Shown here one piece after another: positions 20,301 through 52,300 of a DNA stretch of 64,000 bases (position 1 is the first letter of the stretch; every line of letters begins with the position of its first letter). The stretch is from positions 62,001 through 126,000 of the forward strand of contig JBLDXI010000074.1 in NCBI GenBank assembly GCA_047495785.1, read 5' to 3'. A program made the translations under genes and the position numbers. The notes below the pieces were generated by a model, which worked only from the letters and a program-made list of their open reading frames with translations, was not told the DNA's origin and searched no databases. The DNA comes from Lepidodermella squamata (taxonomy: Eukaryota > Animalia > Gastrotricha).

Positions 20301-22643
20301 CCACCGCCTCGGTTCAGCTACGACACTATGATTTCGGTGACTAGTTCAGCGAAACATCAGCCGAGAGCGAGCCTGCAATATGCGACAAATTCACTGAAGC
20401 GGGACGAAACGCTCGAGTTGTCACTCGTCTCATTGCCATATGCTGATGTTGAAACAGCTTCAATTGAATTAGGTAAATATTTTAAAACATTTTTAAAAAT
20501 TCAGAATTTTGAATTTTGAATTTCAAAATTCAAGTTTTTATTTCAAGATTTTTCAAGAAAAATTCAAATTTTTTAAAATTGAAATTGAAATTTATGAATT
20601 GAAAAAAATGAGAATTTTTCCTTAATTTGTTTTCCGTTAACGTTGATATAGGGCGCTATCCGATCCAACAGCAACCTCTGAGCATTACCGAAATCGCACC
20701 CATTACTTATTCTACAGCAATTTCATCCCATTCCATCTGCATCTACCCACCACCGGTTCCGCCCAGCCCATCTCGAGCTGCGGCCAACCGATCCAACCGA
20801 CCCAGGGCGCCTATTGCGACCATGAAAAGCCTCGAGTACTTCGACACGTCTTCCGGTGGCGCGACGTCGTCTTCCCCGCGACCTAGCGTGAGAGGGTCGC
20901 GCAAAGGCGTTAACGGCCAGGTGCTGCTGGCGAAAAAACCGCGCCGACCTCGATTAGCTAATCAGTCATCATCGACAAGTGCTAGCGAATCGCCGCGGCG
21001 GTCGTTGCCTATCGAAAATCGCCAGTCTGTAACAGTCTCAATCGACCCGGTTGCTACGGCATCAGAACTAGTTTACGGGTAATTAATTTCGGGAGAAAAA
21101 TTATTACGCAATTCACTAGTTCCATGCCGCAAAGATCAATTTAGCGCGAATTTAGCCAAAATAGTCATTGAAAAACTAAAGTCAAAGCGACAGCGAAATT
21201 CAAAACTGCACTGGAAAAAGACAAATGCGCTTTAACATATGACACCGTTTTTTCCACTTTTTCAATCCTATTATTTAAATTTGAAAATATTGTAATATAA
21301 TTGTTCTTGAATCCTCTTTTGTAGAGATCCTTCTCAGGAAGCGAGCGATCAGCCGATAAGAACGCGCCGTTTCTCTGATACGTTCAACTGCGAGCGGTAC
21401 GTACCCATCGGCGGGCCGATGGTGCCGCAAAAACTCATCGATATGGTTCGAGAGAGGGACTACCAGCGCCAGGTTGCGCTCATAAAACGCGGCCGCGTCG
21501 CCCCGGTGCGCAGCAGCGCGCGCACGACCCTCGCGCGGCAAGCGACGGCGCGCATTCTGAGCCTGAAGCGCGCCCTCACGCGCCAGCCGGCCAGCGATAA
21601 AGACACGGCGATTCAAACGCTGGCGAGGCGCATCAAGAAAGAACGCCAGGCCGGCCAGGCGCTGCTCGTTGTCCTGCTGTGTTTCGTGTTCATGTGGGCG
21701 CCGTTTTTTATTATCAACATGGCGTACGGAATCTGCGATCAATGCGTTAACAAGCACCTGTTTGTTGTCTTCACGTGGATCGCGTGGTCGTCTTGCGGGG
21801 TCAATCCTATCGTTTATACACTGTAAGCTTTTACTACCTATGATTTGAATCAAGGAAAGGGTTAATATTGAAGTAAACATTGAATAATCACTATAATTGA
21901 GGCTTTGGAACGAAATATATATGATTTTTTGTTATTTTGGTGAGATGGTTTTGGTCCCAACAAACTAAAACCGTGGTATTCTTTAAGCCAGAAGTTGATA
22001 GCTGGAACCCTGAACTTTCGGAAAGTTTTAGGTAGTGATCTAACTTCGATCGAGTCGAGAGTTTCTGTTAAATTCCGAAAATTACCGAACCAGTCAGGAG
22101 CCAGTTACCAGCCGGGTTTTCCGGGTTTTCTCAGGTTAATTTTTCCTCTTTCTTCGGTTAAATCGCGGATAAAAGATGCAATATTTCTCGGTAGGTTTAA
22201 TTTAAATAATTCGTTGAATTTTCTACAAAAAGTTGCAAGTTAAAAAATAATTGCGCAACTTCTGGGGCAATCTGTACCATTTGATCCCACCTGGTCCACT
22301 CCGTCCGAAATGTCCGAAATGTCCCCAAATCCTAAATTTTCGGAGTTTGTCCATTATTACCGCGCAATTGCTTGAGAGTCCAAGGCGGTTCTGACGATGA
22401 GGATTAGTCCGAAGTCTCACCATCAAAAAGGCGAAAATATAGCTGGATTATGTCTCGCATATTTGTCAAATTGATTTCCTAATAATTTTGAGATTTTTCA
22501 AATAATTTTACAGATGCAGCCGACAATTTCGACAAGGTTTATTCCGCAACCTCAGCGACGCTTTCGGCCGGGTCTCGGCTTTCGGCCGCGAAAGTTCTGC
22601 TATCGCCAGCATCCGCAGCTTGAAAAGCTTTAGATCACGTTAG
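17323..22643 (+). CDS. Biogenic-amine (5-HT2-like) rhodopsin-family GPCR, ~956 aa
   Basis: Exons 17323-17673, 17905-18069, 18471-19312, 20015-20472, 20652-21078, 21325-21822 and 22514-22643 (2871 nt, in phase). TM2 SLSLVDL; TM3 DVMFCTASICHHCAIALHRY with the amine-binding Asp; TM5 YSSIVSFFIP; TM6 FVFMWAPFF; TM7 NPIVY; helix 8 SRQFRQGL. Confidence 0.9.
18182..18427. mobile_element. Fold-back MITE in GPCR intron 2
   Basis: Terminal inverted repeats TTGGGGTTATTTTAGAAGCCGTC ... GACGGCTTCGAAAAATAACCCCCAA, with further internal complementarity; non-coding. Confidence 0.65.
22070..22274. mobile_element. Partial copy of the MITE at 51197-51573
   Basis: Shares CCGAAAATTACCGAACCAGT..., GGATAAAAGATG, TGAATTTTCTACAAAA and TTGCGCAACTTCTGGG..CTG, followed by TA. 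Confidence 0.7.
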
Positions 22644-26400: not shown

Positions 26401-29400
26401 ATAGTGGAAAAAATCGCAAAATTAGCGACAAATTGAATCAAGTTATATCAAATCGGGGTTTAACTTTCTATTCCATTTTTTGCATGATACCTATGATGCA
26501 TAGGCACGGTTAAACAAGTTGACAAGTGATTTTACGATGCCAAATGAAATACAGGGTTGTGAATTGAACTGACCGCCAATGATCACATATGAAAAAATCA
26601 TCCGCTGTTGTTTGTGGATGAGTAAAAATAATCTGTAGATGTTATATCGATTAGGAAAACTGATGGAAGTTCTATTTTCGAAATTTCGAATTGGAAAATA
26701 TTTGGGCTTGGTTTGACGACTTGAGACCGAAAAACTGGACAGTTCGGTAAAATGCATTATTTTCAAGGAAATGTTGAAATGCTCAGATTTTGTTTTCAGT
26801 TTGACTTCAGTTTCAATTTGATCGAAGCAAAATTATTCATGGCAATTTGTTTTCTTTTCGAACTATTAAAAAATTTATTATAAATATATTATGGTTCTCA
26901 AATTTTTGGATTTTCCATGCTTAAATTCAAATAAAATCCCATCAAATTTGACGTAATTTTCAGTACTTAAAACACGGAGTAATATTGATTTGAGAAAATC
27001 CTTCGAAAATGACACTTCAATTGATTGAATTTGACGTGAAGTTTGAAATTTGTGTTTCCGCTAGGGGCTCGAGGCACCGCATATTCGGTCCAAGCTCTTG
27101 GTTCCTCTAATTTTCAACTTCAGACTTCCCTAAACTTCCCATGGGATGAAGCCAATCGTTCACATCCAATAAAAAATGCAAATTTTATGAACTTACATAT
27201 GCACATGAAGGTGACTTCGAGGTAGAGCGAGCGCAACGGGCAGGCTAAATTCAACTTCTGGCAATTGCCAAGAATGTTATCACTCGCAAACACGCTGCAG
27301 TTCGACTTGTCGTTACACAACGCCGAAACGAAGGGTTTCACATCGAAAAATCCGCAATCCGCCTCAATAGCGCCATCATCGACCGGATTCTGCTGCCCGC
27401 ACGTCATTTCATTCGGGAAACTGATACGCCCGAAATGCGCCTGGACGATGCGGATGACGTCATTCGACCGGCTGCCGAACGGACCGCCGCAACTCAACTG
27501 AGCAACTGTGTTGTAGCAGATTTGCCGAGTCGTCAGAATCGCCTCAGCCTGGGGTTGAGGGTTGTAGGGTCCATTCGGGGTGGTCGGTGCGATTGTCGAC
27601 GTCATAGGCAGTTGCGACATAGTAACCGGCATTGGCGTGGTAGTTGGAGCGCTAGTTGGGATAATCGGGCCGTCTAGGCGTTGGTAGAAACGCAGATTCA
27701 CGTCGTTGCTCGAGTCCAGATTGCAGGCCTGTGATTTTGGCAGACAGTGCTGTTGGGCGAGGATGTACGTGAAACCGACACAGTTGGCCATTGACCGGCA
27801 AGTATCGGCGCACTGGTCGCTTGAACAGGGCATGCATTCGCCTTGGGGTATGGTTCCACTCCAGCAGTTTTGGTTCGGCACCTCCTGGAAGCCACGTGGG
27901 GTCGGGAACCACGTTGTAGCTGTTGGCTGGTTAGTCGTAGGCGCGGGCGTGGTGGGCGGAGCTCCAACTGAAAAAATTCGAATTAAATCGTAATAAATTA
28001 GAGTAAAATCAGATTATCCACATGAACATGATTCCCTAACGCTAATTAGAAAATAGGTTGATCAAGAATTAATCTAAACGATAAATCTTGCAAGCAGTAG
28101 CTAACTTCCAATACTATTTTTTAAATCAAGTTAGTGTTTTTTACTACAGATTCGATTGATTTCGATGAGTTCTTCATCTCCATTATTTTTAAGCTCAAAA
28201 ACTCTGAATATGACTTCAGTATCAAATCTAGTATCAAATCACCGAAAAATCTGGAAAAATACCGAAAATTATCGAAAAAATACCAAAATGTGACCTTCAG
28301 GGTTTTTATTCCCAATTGTTCTAGTCAATTGCGAAATCAACCCAAACTTCGAAATATCTAACTCCTTTACTAAATTTGATGGAAACCCCATTAGAAAGCA
28401 AAATAAAAGAAACTACAGCTGCCCCACAAGTTTTGCTATTTTTCGAGTTATCACATTTTGATTCGGTAATTTACGATATTTTACTAGATTAAACAAAAAT
28501 TCTGCGCAGTTTTCAATCTTATAGATCGACCAGTTTCTACTTGCATTTTTATTGAATTTTGAATTGCCACTGGCCTGGATTGAACATCATAAATGCCTTT
28601 TTCCTTTATACATTTTTGGTTACGATTTGGACAAATATTGTGTCATTCAAAGTCCTTACTATATAGTTGATAACATAGTCACGGTGAAACAGGTTGACAA
28701 GTGATTTTACGGTTCCAAATATAAGACAGGGTTGTGAATCGAACTGACCGTTAATTACCACAGATGAAAAAATTATTCGCTGTTGTTTATGGATGAGGTA
28801 AAAATAAAAAATAATAATATCTTTATAAGTTATATCGGCTAGGCACCTAGGCATCTTGAAAATGGATAGATCTTCCAAATTTGTCTACGGCTTTTTTGCA
28901 GACTTTCTATGGAAGTTTTATGGAATAAAATAGCTTTTTCGGCGTAAATCACAAGAGAACTTTTCAACTAAATTTCGAATTTTAAGCTCAGAAAAAGGTG
29001 CTATTTTCAAAGAGTTATCAATTTTATGGTCGCGATTTAGGCCAAAATTCAAAGTCCTTACTGAAGTTTAGTTATTTTATAATCCTAAAATCGTAACTCC
29101 ATTGATCCCGATTGATCCATCTTGTTTTCCAGTCAATAATACATAATTTATATAAAGACGTTTTTGGTCAAGGTTGCACTAATTCGAGCTAATTATAGCA
29201 ATATAGAAAATAAATTACGTCTCGAGTAGAACACAATATTAGCATCAGGCGAGGGTGTAAAGCACGGCGTGGACACGGGCAAGCAGGTGCGTTCTGGGCC
29301 GACCCAAGTGAAACCGACGCAGTTGGTACTCGCCCGGCAATTCGCGGCGCACTCTTCAATCGAGCACGCCTGGCAAGACAACTGCGCGAGTTGGATCGAC

Positions 29401-43362: not shown

Positions 43363-46300
43363 ATGGCTTCGGCTATATCGAAGCCTCCCGATTTGGCAGC
43401 AGAGCCTAGCTCTCTGCAGAAAACTTGGCTGTTGGATCCCAATATTGGATTCAAAAGCAAAGTAGCTGTTCCTAAAAATCCCAAACTTCTGAAAGGCGAA
43501 GCTGCTAAAGTTCAGCCCAAAACCTCTCCTTCAGCTTTCATGTACAAGATGTCGTTAGATACAAGGCAAATTCTTGACGAAACTCACGAGATGCGAGTTC
43601 CTAAGAAAACGAAACTCCTTGATATGGGCGATACCAGCTATCAGCGCTTTTCGATCGTTAACGTTGACGAGTGCATGTTTCAGCCCTTTCCTTCCGAAAT
43701 CTACTTTCAGAAATACAAACCTTTTGAGACTTACGAGATCCCTCTCCTATTTCGCAACAACGATTCTGTTCCTCGTCTGATCAAAGTTACACAGAAAGAT
43801 TCGCCTTATTTCAAGATCATCAGTCCTCACGATGTTGGTCATAAAGTAGGCGCAGGTTTGGCCACTATCTTCCGTGTTCAGTTCATTCCAGAAGATACCA
43901 AAGACTACGTCCACGAAGTGCAGTGCATAACCGAGCGCGAAGAGTTTGTCATACCGATAAAGTGCATCGGAGCAAGGGCGATTCTTGACTTCCCGGATGA
44001 AGTTAACTTTGGTTCGGTGCCTGTGAAGCATATTACCAGTAAGACGCTCTATGTTCGTAATATTGGAACTTGCGATGGCAAATTTCAACTGACGTGCGAT
44101 GGCCCGTTCAAAATTGACCCATGGGAGGGCGTTGTTTGCGTGAACGAGGCTATCCAAATCACCGTTTATTTCCGCCCTCAGACTTCGGGTTTTCACGGTG
44201 CAGACATGAAGCTTCATTTAGACACAGGCGATGACATATACATCAAGATGTCTGGAACTGCAAATGATGCAAATGTTCGTCTTGACAAGAATCAAGTCAA
44301 AATCGACAAGACTTACATCTCGCTCGCCAATCAGCGAACTGTCACAATTTGCAATAGCAGTGATTTCGTCGCCAAGTTTAAATGGACAAATTTATCTACT
44401 GAAATGGAGGAGGAGCTAGAGCGCCAAAAGCGGCGATTGGCTCTTGCTGTTGAAGAACAGCGCGACTCTGAGCGTGCCATTCAACAAGCTGATATAACTG
44501 CTAGGGACGAGTTATCTATTGTCAAGCAGCTATACAAGAATAAGCAGCGACAGTTGAATGATGACCGCTTCCTTTTCTCAGACGACGTGATTCAGATCTC
44601 GCCGCTTGAAGGCGAAGTTTGGCCGAATAGTACATGCGATGTCGCTGTGTTATTCAAGCCTTTCTCAGCTCAAAATTACTCTCGAACTGCTTATCTCGAC
44701 ATAACAGGTCGCGAAAGTAGGATTCCTCTTAAAATTCAAGGCGAAGGCATTGGGCCCAAAGTTCAGTACAGCTTTGATGTATTAGACCTCGGTCACGTTT
44801 TCGTTGCCTCAACGCATACTTATGAGGTAATTCTAACAAACCGAGGTGACATTGATGCGATGTATTCGATAAAACAATCAAACACGGCATTTGGTCGATG
44901 TTTCTCATTCAATCCTACCGAGGGAATAATCACGGCCAATAATGACTCATCATATCAGGCCATCGAAATAACTTTCGCTCCACCTCTCGGTCTACTCGGA
45001 AGTTTCGAGGAGGAATTTGAAACTGTGATAGATGGCCTACCGCAAACTATGAAATTGCGATTCCGAGGTTCAGTTATCGGCCCAACTTGTGGCTTCAATG
45101 TGAATGAGCTGGCTTTCGGACGCATTCCTTACGGTTTCGTGCAAACTCGAAACTGTGTCTTGCAGAATACCTCTCTTGTACCAATGACGTTTCACCTGAG
45201 AATGCTAGCTGATGGCAATGTCGACGTTTTCAGCACAGCTACTGAAATCATGAGCGCTGAGATTACTAATCCGAAAGAATTCAGGATCACTCCAGAAAGC
45301 GGGGTTCTAGAGCCTGAATCCTCTGTCGAAATCAAAGTTGAAGTGCTTTCGCTTTCAAAGCACGACCGTCGCTATACAACTGCGCTAGTCGTTGACGTTG
45401 ATGGCGTTGGAAGTGAAGTTCTGAACCTGCCAGTTTCTGGAGTTTGCATTGTCCCGCAGTTGACAGTTCGCAACGCAGTTATCCACGCGGGTCGATGCTT
45501 TTTGGAACACCCTTACTCCGTCAATCTTATGCTGTACAACGAGTCCGATTTGCCATGCAGATTTCAGCTGCTTCAACAGCCTATGAATTCGAATTCACCG
45601 ATTTCCTTCCAAACTCCGACCCCGAACGGCTTGGTCGATGGGTTAACCGACGTTCAAGTTCCTGTTGTGATGAGGGCGAGACAGTTGGGTGATGTCTCCT
45701 CGGTTTTGTACGTGATGGTCGTCGGAAATCGCGACCCGCCCTCAGCTGTTCACATCGAATGCTGCGGCCAGGGCCCGGTGGTTAACATCCATCTGCCTAA
45801 TCCTGAGCTGAACTACGGCAAACTTCCAGTTTTGAAAGATTGCCCGAAAATTATTCAATTATCGAACGAATCGCCGATTCCCGCGAAATTTCGGGCTTAT
45901 CTTCAAAAGGCTGACACATCACAATGGCGAGTTGATACGGGCGAATCGGGAGAAATTCCGCCTGAATCGTTTTACAATCTAAACTTGGTCGCGAATTTGA
46001 ACGATACTGTCAAATTTCAAGACCGGCTTGTCGTTGAAGTTACCCATAGCCAAACTCACACGGTTAATCTAGCCGCGACCGGGGTTGGTACCACAATTGT
46101 TTTCGAGCCGAAAATCGCGCCAACTTTCCACGCTGGTTCAGTTTTCTGTAAACGAATGATTGAATGGCAATTTACGGCAACGAATCGCGGTCGTAGAATT
46201 CACGATTTGAGGCTGAAAAATATCTCCCACGCCCCGAGTCAATACTCAAAAACGCAGTCGAAAGACAGCGAAATTCTCGAGCAAAACGCGATTTTCCGCA

Positions 46301-49300
46301 TAAATCCTCGCCATATGGAGGTTCAGCCAAACGAAAGCCGGCCGATAACGATTTCAGCGTATTGCGACGACGCTCGTCCAGTGACTGAATCGTTCACTGT
46401 CGAGGCAATTGTTGGTAAACACGGCGCGAAAATTTTGCTCTTCAAATTTGACTTTAGCGCCGATTTCGTCAATCCAATTCTCAATATTCTGCCTAAACAG
46501 CTGTATTTCCGAATTGATCGATACCCTGGGTCGACTTTGACCGAACAACTGGCTAAATTAGCCCTGCAAAACATGACGCCGTTGCCCTTGACCCTAACAA
46601 TGACCCTACCTAACCCTTTCCACATTCTACCAGCGATTGAAGGTGGCTTGGATCAAAGTTTGACTCAGGTTGAAAATGGCGAAAAATTCGTTCGGCATTT
46701 GAAGCCTGACGAGGGCGTTGAACTCGATGTTCAGTTTAACATCGCCGATAAGGCCGATCAATACTCGGCGATTTTCGACGAAACCGTGACGGTAACGTTT
46801 GAAGAACATCCAACTGAAGAAAATTTCCGAGTTCGCGGCGAAGTTTTCTTCCCGAATTTATCCTTCGATCGAACTGTTGTCGATTTCGGTTGTATTGTTA
46901 ACGACACTGAGGTGACGCAAATCGTCAGTATGACGAATACAAGTCCGATGGATGTTAAATATCGGTGGTATTTCTTGATTGATGGCCAGCCGATAAGTTT
47001 TAACCCTGATATTGAGAAATTGATGGAGGGATTCACGACAGTCCCGGCGGTTCCTCTTAAGCCAGTTGCGTCTTCTCATAAGGAATTATCAGGGCTAACA
47101 ACCGCGTTTGGCGAAGTCCAGGATCAGGAAAACGGGGACGGATTTTCGCCGATTAAATTCACCCAGGGTGATGCGGAGGGTACCGTTGAGGGTGAGCCGG
47201 AAGCTGAATCCGAGCATCACGTTAGCCAGGAGAATCAAGAAGGCCAGGAACAGGGTTTCCTTCAGATGTTGAACCAAAACGGGGAGAAGGAGGAAAAGTA
47301 CCAGAATGAAGCTATGGAGAAAGACCTAACCCCTCCAACCGACCAAAACACTGACCAAAACCTCGGACCTAGGGCTCATACTATGATGGAGGGGGCAAGT
47401 CCTGATGTTATGGATGATTCAGCTCGGATTCCACCTTTAGCCCTCCACCGAGCTAGAACTACCCTTCAACTCCATTCCAGGACATCAATGGCCCCTCATG
47501 GCTTCAAATCAACCTATAGAAAGCGGATTATCAACGAAAATCTCGCTTCACTGATGCAGAACCCATTCGGCCCGAAAGAGCCTAACGTAGCTATTGAAGA
47601 AGTTTTCGACATTCGCCCGTTATTTGGGACATTGAAGCCAGGCGAAACTGAACGCGTTACCTTCGCATTTTTCGGCCACGCTTTCGTTAACGGTCGCGTT
47701 AAGGCGATTTGCGAGGTAGTTGGCGGTCCTAAGTACGAGATGCAGCTATGCGGCCAGGCTTCATTGATGAAGTACGAACTCGACCAGTTTGAAATCGATT
47801 TCGGATCGTTCAATTTCGATACAGTCGGCGAGAGGACGTTTCACATTATCAACAGCGGTGATGTTGGGTTTAATTTCACGATTTCGCCTAATAATTGCCC
47901 GTTAATTGACGAGGGATTCATTCAAGTCCAGCCTGGTTGCATCAAAGTTAGCCCTGTTAGCGGGTATCTAGCCGGGAATAGTAAACAAGCCGTTAAGGTT
48001 CAATATCTCCATGGAATGCCAGATTTTTTCGTCAAGTCGTTCAAGCTTCAAGTCGCTCATTTCCCGCCTGAAATCGTGCAAATTTTCGGCGAAGCGTCCT
48101 ACCCTAGAGTCGCGTTGAATTTGCCGTTTTTCGACGAGGAAAGCGTCTACCGGCCACTGGCGAAGAAAGTTCGCGATTTGGTCGAAAGCGAACGCCCGAA
48201 AACGTTTTACCCCAGCGGAAATTTCGCCCCAAGTGAAGATGAAGTTCAGGCTGAAGTCGAGAAAATGTTGATCAAAGACTTGCTAGCTCTGAATGGGTCC
48301 TTTGTCCTAAAAACTGGCACTGGCATTCGAAGGCCGCGAATTCTGGACTATTTGCTCGATTTTGGTCACGTTATTATGGGTGCGATTCGGACGAAGTACA
48401 TCAAGATTACTAACGCTGGGCAAGCTCCGGTTTCGATCAACTTTGACTGCAAAGCTCTGTCGAAGAAAGGATTTCAGGTAGGACCCTCAAAATTAAATAA
48501 ATTCCTTACAAATCTCGATAAATTGAAGCAAAATTACTCTTTTTGCAAGATTGGCATGATTTGCAAATTCCAAAATAAATTTAATTTAATTTAATTTTCG
48601 GTGAAATGAACTTTGAAAAATTAATTAATTAATATGAATTTAAATTTAGTGAAATTGAAATTTTCTAATTGAATTCCTTGAATGTCAAATTATGTGGGAA
48701 ATCGATTTTTATGGATAATACGATGATTAACCCTTGAAATTATTTTTCTCTTCTCCAGATTGAGGTGGATCGGATTCGAAATTTGCCTCCTGGCGAAACT
48801 CTGGACGTAATGGTCGGTTTCGACCCACGTTGGGCTAACCTTGAATTCGGCCCAGTCGAGGCCCACCTACCCCTCGAAGTCAGCGATGGCCTTGAATACT
48901 ACATCCACTGCCGGGCTAACGTCACCATGCCAGAGTTCATTTTCAACCAAACCGTCGTCAGTTTTGAAGAGGTCCGAGTCGGCGAGGTGAAACTCATCAC
49001 CATTCAAATGATCAATTCAAAAGAAATCCCGTGCGAATGGAGCGTTGTTAGCCGATCGGCGCTAGACGCGGTTAAAATTGATAAACACGTCCCGCTTCAC
49101 CTGCGCAAAAAAGCGATCAAAGCCGCGTTGCAATCGAAACCGCCTAATGTTTTCGAAATTTTACCATCAAGCGGAATTTTACTACCCGGCCAGCGGTTTA
49201 ACGTCCAGGTGAAATTCATGCCCTTGGAAGAGCGGGCTTATGACGACAAAATCACGGTTAAAGTCAATCAAAGCAGTACTAGGGTGACTCTGCAATGCCG

Positions 49301-52300
49301 TGGGAGTGGCATGGAGCCGCGGATAGAGTTCGACCCGACTCTGGTCACCCTAGGCCCGATCTTACCGCACAGCTATGGCGACGAGAAGGACGTGATTATT
49401 CGAAATCCTTGCCCATTCCCGATCGAAATCTACAATTTGGAGCATGATAAACAATATTTGCAAGACGAGCAAATTTTGCGCTTAGTCCGCGGCTGGGATG
49501 CGAACAGTTTGTTGTTGCTACCCCCTAGACCGGCTGGGGACCGTTTACCGAGTGAATTGCTCGAGTATTATGACGATCATTTGCGCAAGTTGAGCGATGT
49601 TGAAAAGTCTGAATTTGAGGCGGCCATGTATGGAACGGCGCCGTCTTTGCCGTCAGCTGCTGCTACGACCGCAACAGTCGTGGTTCCGCCTGAAGGATCG
49701 CCGACTGCTGACCGCGACGACGCTTTCATTATGCCGGGTGCGAAATCGGAAAAGGCCGATGCAAGCTCTGAAGGCAAGTTTTCTTAAATTTCGAGCTTTT
49801 ACTACGGAATTGGGCAATTTTCTTTTAGGTTATAAAGCTGAAAGTTCTCAAGTTTAAATTCTTAATTAAATTCAAGCTATTGAAAAATTCGAATTTTTGC
49901 AACTTTTTAAAACACGAAATTGTTGATTTTACAATTGACCACACTTTCGAATATTGATATGTTTTCAAGTCACTTTTGAGTTTTTTGAAATAAGTGATTT
50001 ATTTATTATATTATTAAAATTTACAAAGTGAGTAATAATTGAGCGATTATTTACACAAGCGCTTGATTAGGAAATAGAGAACAATGATAGCGAAGTTAAC
50101 GTAAATTTTCGGAGCGACGATTCGGAAGCTGAGTTTGACTTCGTAGATTCGATTTTCGTGTTGCTGATCGTCGAAATTCGTCAATTCGTAATTGATTTCG
50201 ATCGTTCGACTGATCACGTGGCCGCCCTGCCAAATTACCGGGACATCCGGGTTTAAAGCCGGGTAATAATCATCCGCAATGCGGCGAAATTCTGCACCGA
50301 TTTCTTGCAATATCTGAAAAAAAATTACAAATTCAAAATTATTTATCCAAAATTATGCAAACAAATTACCTGGATAGGTGAGAATTGGCCGTCATTCATT
50401 TTTGGTTGATGAGGCGTGGTAATTAAGCTAGTTAATTTTGCGCGTTAATTAACGATCTTGCACTTGCGGCAAAAATAGCAATAAATGAGCGCTTTATAGC
50501 CATTGCTTTACTCTTATGCATCCGCATATACCCAGGTATGTAAAACAATACATGCACTAATGATATAAATGTTATTAGTAATTGAATCACGTGCTAAGTG
50601 GTTAATTAGTTGAGTCTCTCGAAGCAAAATAAAAGCGGCCAGGGTGTCGTAAAACTTAACGATTTTGCGCGTCAAAGGTGCGCACCGGCTCATAAACTAG
50701 GCGCGGTTTAATTGCCATCCAATAAAAGTGTCGACCGCCTCACTTTTTTGTGTACTCGCTTACCTGTCGCGGGCGCCGGATCGACGGGTCGTAAATCATT
50801 ATCCGCATTTATGGCGTGGCCAGGTGTTGCGAGGCGTCAGGTGCGCTCTTCAAGACATTGTACTCAAGTCGAGGATTATTGACCTGCCAATAAGGACTCG
50901 CAGAGAAAGATCGTAAATTTCTCACTCCATTAGCCTATTTTAATGAGATAAACAATAAAAAATGGACAATTTGTGACTGTCATAGTCTATTGCCTTTTAT
51001 GATGTCACCTGCATTGACATTAATAGATTTAGCCGTAAAATAGATGAGAGACTGACTCGTGAAATTGGGAATAATGATTACTTGAGACGAGAAGATAAGG
51101 AATGACAGGGTACAGGAAAAAAAATTAATCTGTATCAGACCAAAAATCAGAATATTCGGGTTGGCGGATCTCGGAATTTTAAGCCAGACGGAGTTACAGC
51201 GTGTCCCATAAGTAACGCTAGCAAAGATGATACACGGAAAAGGGTTCAGAAACTCTATATAATGAGAAACGAATGGCCAGAAAGTTTTTAGAAAAATTGA
51301 AAAAAACACGAGAATAGTAATCAATTATGCCACTTTTTAATGGGATTAAAAAAGTTCGGAGAAATTTGGTCCAACCGAGAAAAATACCGAAAATTACCGA
51401 ACCAGTTACCATCGGGGTTTTCCGGGTTTTCTCCGGTAAATTGCGCATTTCTACGGTTGAATTGGGATAAAAGATGGGAAATTTTCTCGATGGGTTTATT
51501 TTGAAAAATTAGCTGAATTTTCTACAAAATATATCCAACTTAAAAATAGTTGCGCAACTTCTGGGACACGCTGTGATGACAACAACGTTTAGGAAATTTG
51601 TTAATTAATTCTGAATCATTTAAAAAAGAACGGAAGTATTTATAATCTAAATAATCATAATTTCCTGTATAATTCGGAATAAAAAATAGCCATAGCGATT
51701 AAATTTTATTTCGATTTTATTTATCGGCGCTTTACTCTCTAAAAATGTTATTTTTTCTACTTACAGAAGTCATGAAAGATGTTGGCGAGTTGGAACTGAC
51801 CCCAGTAACGCGATCAATCGCCAGGTACCTCGGCATCGACCTGTCTCCCGAAGGTCGGACCGCACGAAACCGGCGCGGCATAACCATCGTAATCAACGGC
51901 CCGCCGAAATCCGGCCGGTCAACCCTGGCACAACAACTAGCCGCCAACTACAATGGCGCGTTGCTCACAATCGACGGCGTTGTAACGGAAGCAATCATCC
52001 GTGGCACAACCCCAGCGGCCATTCGAGCCCGTGAAATGTGCCAGGAGGCGGCAAGACGGCGATTGGAGGAAATTCGCGCCGCGGAAGAGGCCGCGCAACA
52101 AGCCGCGATGCTAGCCGAGGGTGTTTTATTACCTCCTGGCCTGCCCGGGCAGAGTAAAGACGCTAATCTCGGCCACGGTCATGGCAACCTGCGAAAACCG
52201 TCCAGTTTAGCCGATCAGCGAAAACCAGCCCGTGGCGGCCAGCAGCAGGCGCAACAAGCTCAACAAGCCCAACAGGCTGAGCAGCAAATCATTCAAGCCA

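What the first reader, a model, noticed from the sequence alone, without database searches (positions are those of the whole stretch)
50047..50399. Candidate invertebrate BH3-only apoptosis activator nested antisense in a HYDIN intron
Seen in sequence: a clean two-exon 98-aa gene with a TATA box. The N-terminal ILQEIGAEFRRIADDY aligns with BH3 helices as I recall them (PUMA WAREIGAQLRRMADDL, BIM IAQELRRIGDEF). Hydrophobic positions, the small residue and the invariant Asp are kept, with Phe at the usual Leu. The C-terminus is a short hydrophobic helix followed by KRLCK, typical of mitochondrial tail anchors. There are no BH1/BH2 motifs. Established: BH3-only proteins are short, poorly conserved and seldom annotated outside vertebrates, nematodes and cnidarians. 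Inference: a lineage-specific BH3-only protein that gene callers would probably miss.
Basis: partly seen in the sequence, partly recalled or inferred. Interest (0 to 1): 0.8.

Follow-up and report, generated by a model that had tools for sequence, protein, structure and literature searches.

The report
Small BH3-like gene in HYDIN intron
A real, conserved but orphan 98-residue gene sits backwards inside a HYDIN intron; its first helix closely resembles the death-triggering BH3 helix of PUMA, but a related species does not keep the key residues, so a cell-death role is possible and unproven.

Summary
On the minus strand, a 30-nt ATG exon (50399-50370), a 56-nt GT-AG intron and a 267-nt exon (50313-50047) give a 98-aa ORF. 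It lies inside a HYDIN intron (49774-51766) whose splice junction appears in an RNA contig.

The gene is probably real (about 0.85-0.9):
- Its codon usage resembles HYDIN's, and the signal drops at the predicted acceptor.
- Another individual's contig differs by 4 synonymous and 2 conservative changes.
- A relative whose HYDIN is 76-84% identical (metagenome scaffold, L001) has the same two-exon antisense gene in the same intron, although the intron DNA no longer aligns. None of 2,500 random segments matched as well.

The BH3 resemblance is real. Residues 13-26 hit only PUMA BH3 peptides in the PDB (E 0.15) and only Pfam PUMA (E 0.078, below cut-off).

Each species breaks one hallmark residue: Phe replaces the conserved Leu here, and Asn replaces the conserved Asp in the relative. 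The relative's C-terminal hydrophobic stretch is also weaker. The one RNA-like run covers HYDIN exons but not this gene. No other homologue was found among 1.84 billion representative proteins.

Verdict: a new orphan small gene with a BH3-like helix. I put a true BH3-only function at about 0.2. Earlier notes of this scan hold nothing on it.

The parts
50370..50399 (-). Exon 1: ATG plus 9 codons (MNDGQFSPIQ), phase-0 donor CAG|GTAATT
   Evidence: The ACCAAAA(A)ATG context is shared with the relative's exon 1.
50314..50369 (-). 56-nt GT-AG intron, GC 18%, T-run before the acceptor. It contains an in-frame stop, so splicing is needed.
   Evidence: The coding signal drops across it. The relative has a 69-nt phase-0 intron at the equivalent place.
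50047..50313 (-). Exon 2: 88 codons plus TAA
   Evidence: Codon log-likelihood 17.5 against shuffles at -8.6 +/- 5.8. Differences from the X1 contig are 4 synonymous, V69I and T55A.
50266..50301 (-). BH3-like core I15-G-A-E-F19-R-R-I22-A23-D24-D25-Y26 (h1 to h4). The full amphipathic helix is about residues 9-27.
   Evidence: Only PUMA BH3 peptides are hit in the PDB, E 0.15-0.9. The only Pfam hit is PUMA, E 0.078, below cut-off. Hydrophobic moment 0.57. Coordinates checked.
50065..50106 (-). C-terminal hydrophobic segment IYVNFAIIVLYFLI, followed by KRLCK and the stop (50064-50047)
   Evidence: Kyte-Doolittle mean 2.1 over 15-19 residues. Predicted helix at low confidence. The equivalent segment is weaker in the relative.
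50493..50498 (-). TATAAA, about 95 nt upstream of the ATG. It is the only TATA[AT]A in the 300 nt upstream.
   Evidence: Consensus match only; no mapped start site.
50588..50593 (-). E-box CACGTG upstream of the gene. The relative has GTCACGTGAC 100 nt upstream of its ATG.
   Evidence: Noticed after the fact and not tested for significance.
49998..50007 (-). Two overlapping AATAAA signals 40-45 nt after the stop codon
   Evidence: Common in AT-rich DNA, so weak evidence.
49774..51766 (+). Host HYDIN intron (GC-AG, phase 1) that contains the nested gene
   Evidence: The X2 contig's loose end at 49773 continues as 51767 onward. HYDIN domains lie in the flanking exons.

Best explanation
This is a genuine, lineage-restricted, protein-coding gene nested antisense in a HYDIN intron. 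It encodes a 98-residue protein with three parts:
- an N-terminal amphipathic helix of about 19 residues with a BH3-like pattern;
- a variable linker, predicted at low confidence to form a beta-hairpin;
- a short C-terminal hydrophobic helix with a basic tail.

The most likely mechanism is inferred, not shown. The C-terminal helix holds the protein on an organelle membrane. The conserved amphipathic helix faces the cytosol and docks into a hydrophobic groove of a partner protein. The partner is unknown. A Bcl-2-family groove (BH3-only action) is the only named candidate, and I give it about 0.2 because the two hallmark BH3 residues are not both kept in either species.

Shown: the gene structure, the coding signal, the positional orthologue and the motif resemblance. 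Inferred: membrane anchoring, helix docking and any role in cell death.
For: Gene reality:
- Frame-specific codon signal, z about 4.5 against stop-free shuffles, falling at the predicted acceptor.
- GC of exons against intron is 43-47% against 18%.
- Six differences in an independent contig (X1): 4 synonymous and 2 conservative. The neighbouring HYDIN exon shows 6 of 7 differences at third positions.
- Positional orthologue in L001, in the same HYDIN intron, same strand, with a mini ATG exon, a 69-nt phase-0 intron and a 70-codon exon. Local alignment score 58 (29% identity over exon 2). The best spliced model in 2,500 random 626-nt segments never exceeded 53; Gumbel P is about 0.002.
- The two introns share no alignable DNA.
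- The relative's gene is intact and identical in a second assembly, L028.

Architecture:
- Both N-terminal helices are strongly amphipathic (moments 0.57 and 0.54).
- G16, I22, A23 and D25 are identical, and h1, h2 and h4 stay hydrophobic.
- Conservation sits at the two ends, and the linker carries the indels.
- C-terminal hydropathy is 2.1 here.
Against: - No transcript. The RNA-like run X2 covers the flanking HYDIN exons at depth 10-35 but has zero depth from 49847 to 51177.
- Similarity to the relative is weak. On a database-wide footing, exon 2 alone scores 46, tied with random ORF pieces. The orthology therefore rests on position and gene structure.
- Only two species are available.
- The relative's hydrophobic tail is interrupted by Arg, so membrane anchoring may not be the conserved property.
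- The AlphaFold models are of low confidence (pLDDT 53-55).
Confidence: 0.55

Rival explanations
1. It is a true BH3-only death activator. The helix at residues 9-27 binds the groove of this animal's Bcl-2 proteins at the mitochondrial outer membrane and triggers apoptosis. It is probably switched on only under stress.
For: - Residues 13-26 hit only PUMA BH3 peptides among 177,635 PDB sequences: 11 of 14 identical to mouse PUMA, E 0.15.
- The only hit among 24,736 Pfam models is the BH3 segment of PUMA.
- The exact chance of such a 14-mer is 4e-12 per position, about 9e-5 per proteome per template.
- All positions h0-h4, both small residues and the Asp are in register.
- Short BH3 plus C-terminal hydrophobic tail is the layout of HRK and BIK (my own knowledge).
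- Phe at the Leu position occurs in some tight-binding BH3-like peptides (PMC4072508).
- Absence from one transcriptome fits an inducible gene.
- BH3 motifs can arise late within an older family, as in sayonara (PMC10107002).
Against: - The window protein has Phe at the conserved Leu. The orthologue has Asn at the Asp that PMC4072508 calls strictly conserved. Neither meets L-x3-[GAS]-D.
- The relative's N-terminus hits no BH3 peptide, and a two-sequence profile does not raise the PUMA score.
- A loose BH3 pattern turns up about 0.7 times per shuffled 64-kb window.
- The candidate was picked for this resemblance out of a very large scan.
- Many BH3-like peptides bind in vitro without belonging to death genes (PMC4072508).
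- A predicted hairpin is not the usual disordered BH3-only picture, though the model is of low confidence.
Confidence: 0.2
2. It is a small soluble alpha/beta protein. The C-terminal hydrophobic helix and the N-terminal amphipathic helix pack against a beta-hairpin, with no membrane anchor and no BH3-type function.
For: - Both AlphaFold runs give helix, long hairpin, helix.
- The relative's C-terminal segment has only about 10 uncharged hydrophobic residues before an Arg, and its 19-residue hydropathy is 1.43.
- In both species both helices are amphipathic enough to pack on a sheet.
Against: - Model confidence is too low to trust (pLDDT 53-55, pTM 0.37-0.39).
- The window protein has 14 consecutive uncharged hydrophobic residues flanked by Lys and Lys-Arg.
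- The hairpin region is the least conserved part and carries the indels.
Confidence: 0.12
3. It is not a protein-coding gene. On this reading both ORFs are chance products, or relics of a dead gene, and the resemblance between the two species is coincidental.
For: - No RNA support.
- No homologue beyond one species pair.
- ORFs of about 88 codons are not rare in this DNA.
- Exon-2-only similarity is no better than the best random ORFs in 168,000 residues.
- The antisense (+) frame also scores positive for codon usage.
Against: - The codon signal is far above shuffles and is bounded by the splice sites.
- The pattern of differences is mostly synonymous.
- The same two-exon architecture sits in the same intron and orientation in a species whose intron DNA is otherwise unalignable: 0 of 2,500 random segments matched as well.
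- The sequence just before the ATG (ACCAAAA...ATG) is shared.
Confidence: 0.1

Closest known systems
PUMA / BBC3 BH3 helix (vertebrates; Pfam PF15826)
   Same: Residues 13-26 (QEIGAEFRRIADDY) match the mouse PUMA BH3 core (REIGAQLRRIADDL) at 11 of 14 positions, with h1-h4, both small residues and the Asp in register. PUMA is the only PDB and the only Pfam match.
   Different: The score is below Pfam's cut-off (13.7 against 26.4 bits) and there is no similarity outside the motif. Phe stands where PUMA has Leu, and Pro follows two residues after h4. PUMA is reported only from Holostei (garfish) and teleosts upward (PMC8998228), so any likeness would be convergent.
HRK and BIK (small vertebrate BH3-only proteins with a C-terminal membrane anchor)
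   Same: The layout is the same: under about 160 residues, one BH3-like helix near the N-terminus, a hydrophobic C-terminal segment with basic flanks and no other BH motif. This comparison rests on my own knowledge and was not tested here.
   Different: No sequence relationship was detected. The hydrophobic segment here is only 14 residues long and is weaker in the orthologue.
Lineage-specific invertebrate BH3-only proteins (C. elegans EGL-1, schistosome and Hydra BH3-only proteins)
   Same: They are short, fast-evolving, restricted to one lineage, unrelated to each other outside the motif and hard to find by sequence searches (PMC8998228).
   Different: Those proteins keep the Leu and Asp (PMC8998228, legend of its Figure 5), and several have binding or genetic proof. 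This one has neither.
Drosophila sayonara (CG14044)
   Same: It is a BH3 motif that appears only in one sub-lineage of an older protein family (PMC10107002). That is one way to read the difference between the window species (Asp present) and its relative (Asn).
   Different: Sayonara is a coiled-coil protein of the PTHR21974 family, with experimental proof of BH3-dependent killing and of Buffy and Debcl interaction. It is unrelated in architecture to this 98-residue protein.
BH3-like peptides in unrelated human proteins (DeBartolo, Taipale and Keating 2014, PMC4072508)
   Same: These are motif-level matches, some with Phe, Tyr or Ile at the Leu position, that bind prosurvival proteins tightly as peptides.
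   Different: Most are not established death regulators. They show that a good motif does not by itself make a BH3-only gene.

Membership tests
BH3-only proteins (canonical BH3 motif) | Core motif h1-small-x-x-Leu-x-x-h3-small-Asp-acidic-h4; minimal form L-x3-[G/A/S]-D (as quoted in PMC10107002) | tested here: not met
   The window protein reads I-G-A-E-F-R-R-I-A-D-D-Y, which fits everywhere except Phe at the Leu. The orthologue reads F-G-R-Q-L-Q-L-I-A-N-D-F, with the Leu present but Asn at the Asp. Phe at this position is tolerated in some tight binders, and the Asp is described as strictly conserved (PMC4072508).
BH3-only proteins (canonical BH3 motif) | No BH1, BH2 or BH4 motifs and no Bcl-2 fold | tested here: met
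   There is no Pfam family at E up to 10 for the whole exon-2 protein in either species, and 98 residues is too short for a Bcl-2 core.
BH3-only proteins (canonical BH3 motif) | The motif is conserved among orthologues at least as well as the rest of the protein | tested here: inconclusive
   The helix region is about 37% identical against 29% over exon 2 as a whole, and the hydrophobic and small-residue pattern is kept. The two hallmark residues each differ in one species. Only two species are available.
BH3-only proteins (canonical BH3 motif) | Binds the groove of multi-domain Bcl-2 proteins and kills cells in a BH3-dependent way | not testable with these tools
   No complex prediction or assay is available, and this animal's Bcl-2 genes could not be searched.
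BH3-only proteins (canonical BH3 motif) | Largely disordered outside the motif | tested here: inconclusive
   AlphaFold gives low confidence throughout (pLDDT 53-55). It draws a long hairpin at exon-2 residues 33-68.
PUMA family (Pfam PF15826) | Score at or above the curated cut-off of 26.4 bits | tested here: not met
   The score is 13.7 bits, E 0.078, over profile positions 130-145 only, and only when the first 25 residues of exon 2 are scanned alone. Nothing is found for the whole protein.
Tail-anchored membrane proteins | A single transmembrane segment within about 30 residues of the C-terminus and no N-terminal signal peptide | tested here: inconclusive
   The window protein has 14 uncharged hydrophobic residues (80-93) flanked by K and KR, with a hydropathy of 2.1. 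The relative has about 10 before an Arg, with a 19-residue hydropathy of 1.43. No dedicated predictor or localisation data are available.
HYDIN (host gene) | HYDIN/CFAP65-type Ig-like domains in the flanking exons and a spliced junction across the intron | tested here: met
   PF22544 at E 4e-10. HYDIN clusters score 0.96 in the Atlas. Named HYDIN homologues are found. The junction 49773|51767 is seen in an X2 contig.

The most novel reading that the evidence does not exclude
The window species carries a newly born BH3-only protein. On this reading, an older small membrane protein with an amphipathic helix (the state seen in the relative, with Asn at the key position) acquired the Asp and a PUMA-like face by convergence. 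That would give a natural before-and-after pair for studying how BH3 death ligands arise, in an invertebrate lineage with no known BH3-only gene.
Probability: 0.2. Interest if true: 0.7.

Novelty: new member of a known kind. Interest (0 to 1): 0.42.

Why it matters
BH3-only proteins start mitochondrial cell death. They are short, unrelated to each other and missing from the gene lists of most invertebrate phyla (PMC8998228).

A confirmed one here would add a lineage. Together with its Asn-bearing relative, it would offer a rare view of a BH3 motif being gained or lost. Even without that function, this is a clear case of a conserved small nested gene that automatic gene calling misses. It also shows that the orthologous intron in metagenome scaffolds can be used to validate such genes.

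Tried and rejected
- **Sayonara (CG14044):** I read the paper. It is a coiled-coil protein of an unrelated family.
- **PUMA family membership:** below cut-off.
- **Any known family:** Pfam, the word-index search and a full phmmer over 1.84 billion representatives. The single phmmer hit, P0001, is a translated tandem repeat with five repeated stretches and is junk. The ESM Atlas by features also gave nothing usable.
- **Repeat or transposon origin:** the gene region is single-copy in the window. Only 51350-51500 of the intron matches elsewhere.
- **Alternative HYDIN exon on the + strand:** a 61-codon + ORF (50071-50253) has positive codon scores. However, the X2 RNA contig's loose end joins 49773 directly to 51767, the differences fit the minus frame better, and the relative conserves the minus-strand model.
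- **Intronic snoRNA:** only a sub-threshold snoZ101 match at 50938-51025, E 0.41.
- **More orthologues:** 26 metagenome HYDIN loci at 30-60% identity hold no homologue. L028 is the same species as L001.
- **Phylum of the organism:** not resolved. The nearest named HYDINs, a mussel and vertebrates, are about 40% identical.
- **Structure searches:** not run, because both models are of low confidence.
Full report
**1. What is in the sequence**

The minus strand reads as follows:
- an ATG at 50399 in the context ACCAAAAATG;
- 10 codons up to a CAG|GTAATT donor at 50370/50369;
- a 56-nt intron of 18% GC that ends in a T-run and CAG at 50314;
- 88 codons to a TAA at 50049-50047.

The product has 98 residues. 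Exon 2 holds no Met and the unspliced reading hits a stop inside the intron, so the ORF depends on the splice. An in-frame stop lies 16 codons upstream of the ATG. I saw no other ATG between the TATAAA (50498-50493) and the start codon. Two AATAAA signals follow the stop by 40-45 nt.

The flanking + strand ORFs carry HYDIN-type Ig domains. A contig of run X2 leaves the window at 49773 and continues with the letters of 51767 onward. The host intron is therefore 49774-51766, with GC-AG ends.

**2. Is it a gene?**

ORF length alone is unremarkable in this DNA. Four other lines of evidence support a gene:

- **Codon usage.** Scored against HYDIN exons, exon 2 gives 17.5 (0.20 per codon, within the HYDIN range of 0.14-0.34). 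The other two sense frames are strongly negative. Four hundred stop-free shuffles average -8.6 +/- 5.8. Adding the 13 codons upstream of the acceptor lowers the score to 9.2, so the signal stops at the predicted splice site.
- **Composition.** The exons are 43-47% GC, the intron 18% and the 3' flank 25%, like HYDIN's own exons and introns.
- **Variation.** A contig from another sample (X1) differs at six places within 50047-50216: four synonymous changes plus V69I and T55A, with no stop. P(4 or more synonymous of 6) is 0.02 if all changes are equally likely and 0.12 for transitions only. In the neighbouring HYDIN exon, 6 of 7 differences fall at third positions.
- **An orthologue.** A HYDIN protein 76% identical to the window's 1,743-codon exon (P0010) lies on a 38-kb metagenome scaffold, fetched as L001.
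  - The exon before the intron is 84% identical. The orthologous intron is only about 625 nt and shares no alignable DNA with the window's intron.
  - Its minus strand nevertheless holds the same design: an 8-codon ATG exon (16343-16320, context ACCAAAATG), a 69-nt phase-0 GT-AG intron with an in-frame stop, and a 70-codon exon (16250-16038).
  - The two proteins align end to end with a local alignment score of 58; exon 2 is 29% identical.
  - I enumerated every ATG / GT-AG / ORF model in 2,500 random 626-nt segments from the window and all loci. The best score averaged 30.5 and never passed 53. A Gumbel fit gives P of about 0.002.
  - A second assembly of the relative (L028, 99.7% identical DNA) has the identical protein.

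Two caveats apply. On a database-wide footing the similarity is not significant: exon 2 alone scores 46, level with random ORF pieces. The argument therefore rests on position, strand and gene structure. Also, the only RNA-like run (X2, same species) covers the HYDIN exons at depth 10-35 but has zero depth from 49847 to 51177.

I put the probability of a real protein-coding gene at about 0.85-0.9, expressed weakly or conditionally.

**3. The BH3 resemblance**

The first 25 residues of exon 2, searched against all 177,635 PDB sequences, return seven hits. All are PUMA BH3 peptides. The best is mouse PUMA at E 0.15, with 11 of 14 identical. Against all Pfam models the only hit is PUMA, at its BH3 segment, with E 0.078 and 13.7 bits against a cut-off of 26.4.

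The ungapped score to the mouse core is 51. The next best 14-mer in all six frames of the window scores 28, and shuffled windows peak at 34. The exact i.i.d. probability is 4e-12 per position, or about 9e-5 per proteome per template.

All positions are in register: h0 I11, h1 I15, small G16, h2 F19, h3 I22, small A23, D24, D25 and h4 Y26.

Three things weaken this:
- A loose BH3 pattern appears about 0.7 times per shuffled window.
- The candidate was chosen for this likeness out of a very large scan.
- Amphipathic helices are not random sequence.

**4. What the orthologue says about the motif**

Both aligners put the relative's F10-G-R-Q-L14-Q-L-I17-A18-N19-D20-F21 opposite I15...Y26.

The pattern of four hydrophobic positions and two small residues is kept. 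G, I-A and the second Asp are identical, and both helices have high hydrophobic moments (0.57 and 0.54). The ends of the protein are conserved, and the linker carries the indels.

The two residues that define a BH3 are not kept together. The relative has the Leu but Asn in place of the Asp; the window species has the Asp but Phe in place of the Leu. Neither meets the minimal L-x3-[GAS]-D form quoted in PMC10107002.

According to PMC4072508, Phe, Tyr or Ile occur at the Leu position in some tight-binding peptides, whereas the Asp is 'strictly conserved'. The relative's N-terminus hits no BH3 peptide, and a two-sequence profile does not improve the PUMA score.

The result falls in between. A conserved amphipathic, small-residue helix fits a docking helix. 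A canonical BH3 under selection for Bcl-2 binding would be expected to hold Leu and Asp in both species. A late gain in the window lineage, as described for sayonara, remains possible.

**5. The C-terminus and fold**

The window protein ends in 14 uncharged hydrophobic residues between K79 and K94-R95, with a hydropathy of 2.1. That is short but compatible with an outer-membrane-type tail anchor (my own knowledge of such signals).

In the relative the stretch is about 10 residues before an Arg, and the 19-residue hydropathy is 1.43. The anchor is therefore unproven.

AlphaFold, with one or two sequences, draws helix / long hairpin / helix at pLDDT 53-55. That is too weak to use, so I did not run structure searches.

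**6. Relatives and the organism**

There is no Pfam family and no word-index hit. One junk hit came from 1.84 billion representatives. The Atlas gave nothing, and 26 more distant metagenome HYDIN loci held nothing.

The organism is not identified. Its HYDIN is about 40% identical to the mussel and vertebrate proteins and 45% identical to a bdelloid rotifer fragment.

The scan's earlier notes contain nothing on this gene. One unchecked note mentions a Bcl-2-core-like ORF in a Gypsy element elsewhere in the genome.

**7. Verdict**

The gene is very probably real, conserved between two species and unannotated. The BH3 likeness to PUMA is genuine at the sequence level but below the threshold for family membership, and its hallmark residues are not jointly conserved.

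My probabilities are:
- about 0.55 for a small membrane-anchored protein with a docking helix and an unknown partner;
- 0.2 for a true BH3-only death activator;
- 0.12 for a soluble small alpha/beta protein;
- 0.1 for not coding.

Noticed in passing
window 51178-51660: A very abundant short repeat lies inside the same HYDIN intron. Summed contig depth in run X1 reaches about 100,000 against about 60-120 in most of the neighbouring bins, with many internal joints and variants. It is also present in the RNA-like run X2. Weaker copies lie at window 22070-22199 and 28459-28513. It looks like a MITE- or SINE-like family.
   Followed up: partly
window 49774 (donor) and 51766 (acceptor): The host HYDIN intron uses a non-canonical GC-AG pair (AAG|GCAAGT ... 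TTACAG|AAG). This is supported by the loose end of an X2 contig.
   Followed up: yes
window 50588-50593; L001 16436-16445: Both orthologous small genes have an E-box upstream of the ATG: CACGTG in the window, 194 nt upstream, and the 10-bp palindrome GTCACGTGAC in the relative, 100 nt upstream. As far as I recall, the palindrome resembles the CLEAR/TFEB-type element. I noticed this after the fact and did not test its significance.
   Followed up: no
L001 16038-16011: In the relative, the small gene's stop codon lies only about 26 nt from the HYDIN exon's donor site. Its 3' end must therefore overlap the HYDIN exon in antisense. In the window the gap is 273 nt.
   Followed up: no
window 27120-27881 (-) and L001 1-1140 (-): A SUEL-lectin-domain gene lies upstream of HYDIN in both species, so local gene order is conserved. 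L001 also has MOZART1 and Ten1 genes just upstream of HYDIN. I did not look for those in the window.
   Followed up: no
window 50600-50900: This stretch of the intron, upstream of the small gene, has unusually high GC for an intron (CG-rich runs around 50680-50800). It has no convincing ORF and no Rfam family. Only a sub-threshold snoZ101-like match lies nearby, at 50938-51025, E 0.41.
   Followed up: partly
window 52246-52278: A Gln/Ala-coding CAG-rich stretch in the HYDIN exon is the only part matched by run X3, which is a different organism. It is a low-complexity match, not a relative.
   Followed up: no
window 43363-48594: HYDIN here has a single uninterrupted 1,743-codon exon. In the relative the equivalent ORF is about 2,004 codons and also absorbs the next exon, so the window's intron between 48594 and 48765 appears to be absent there.
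   Followed up: partly
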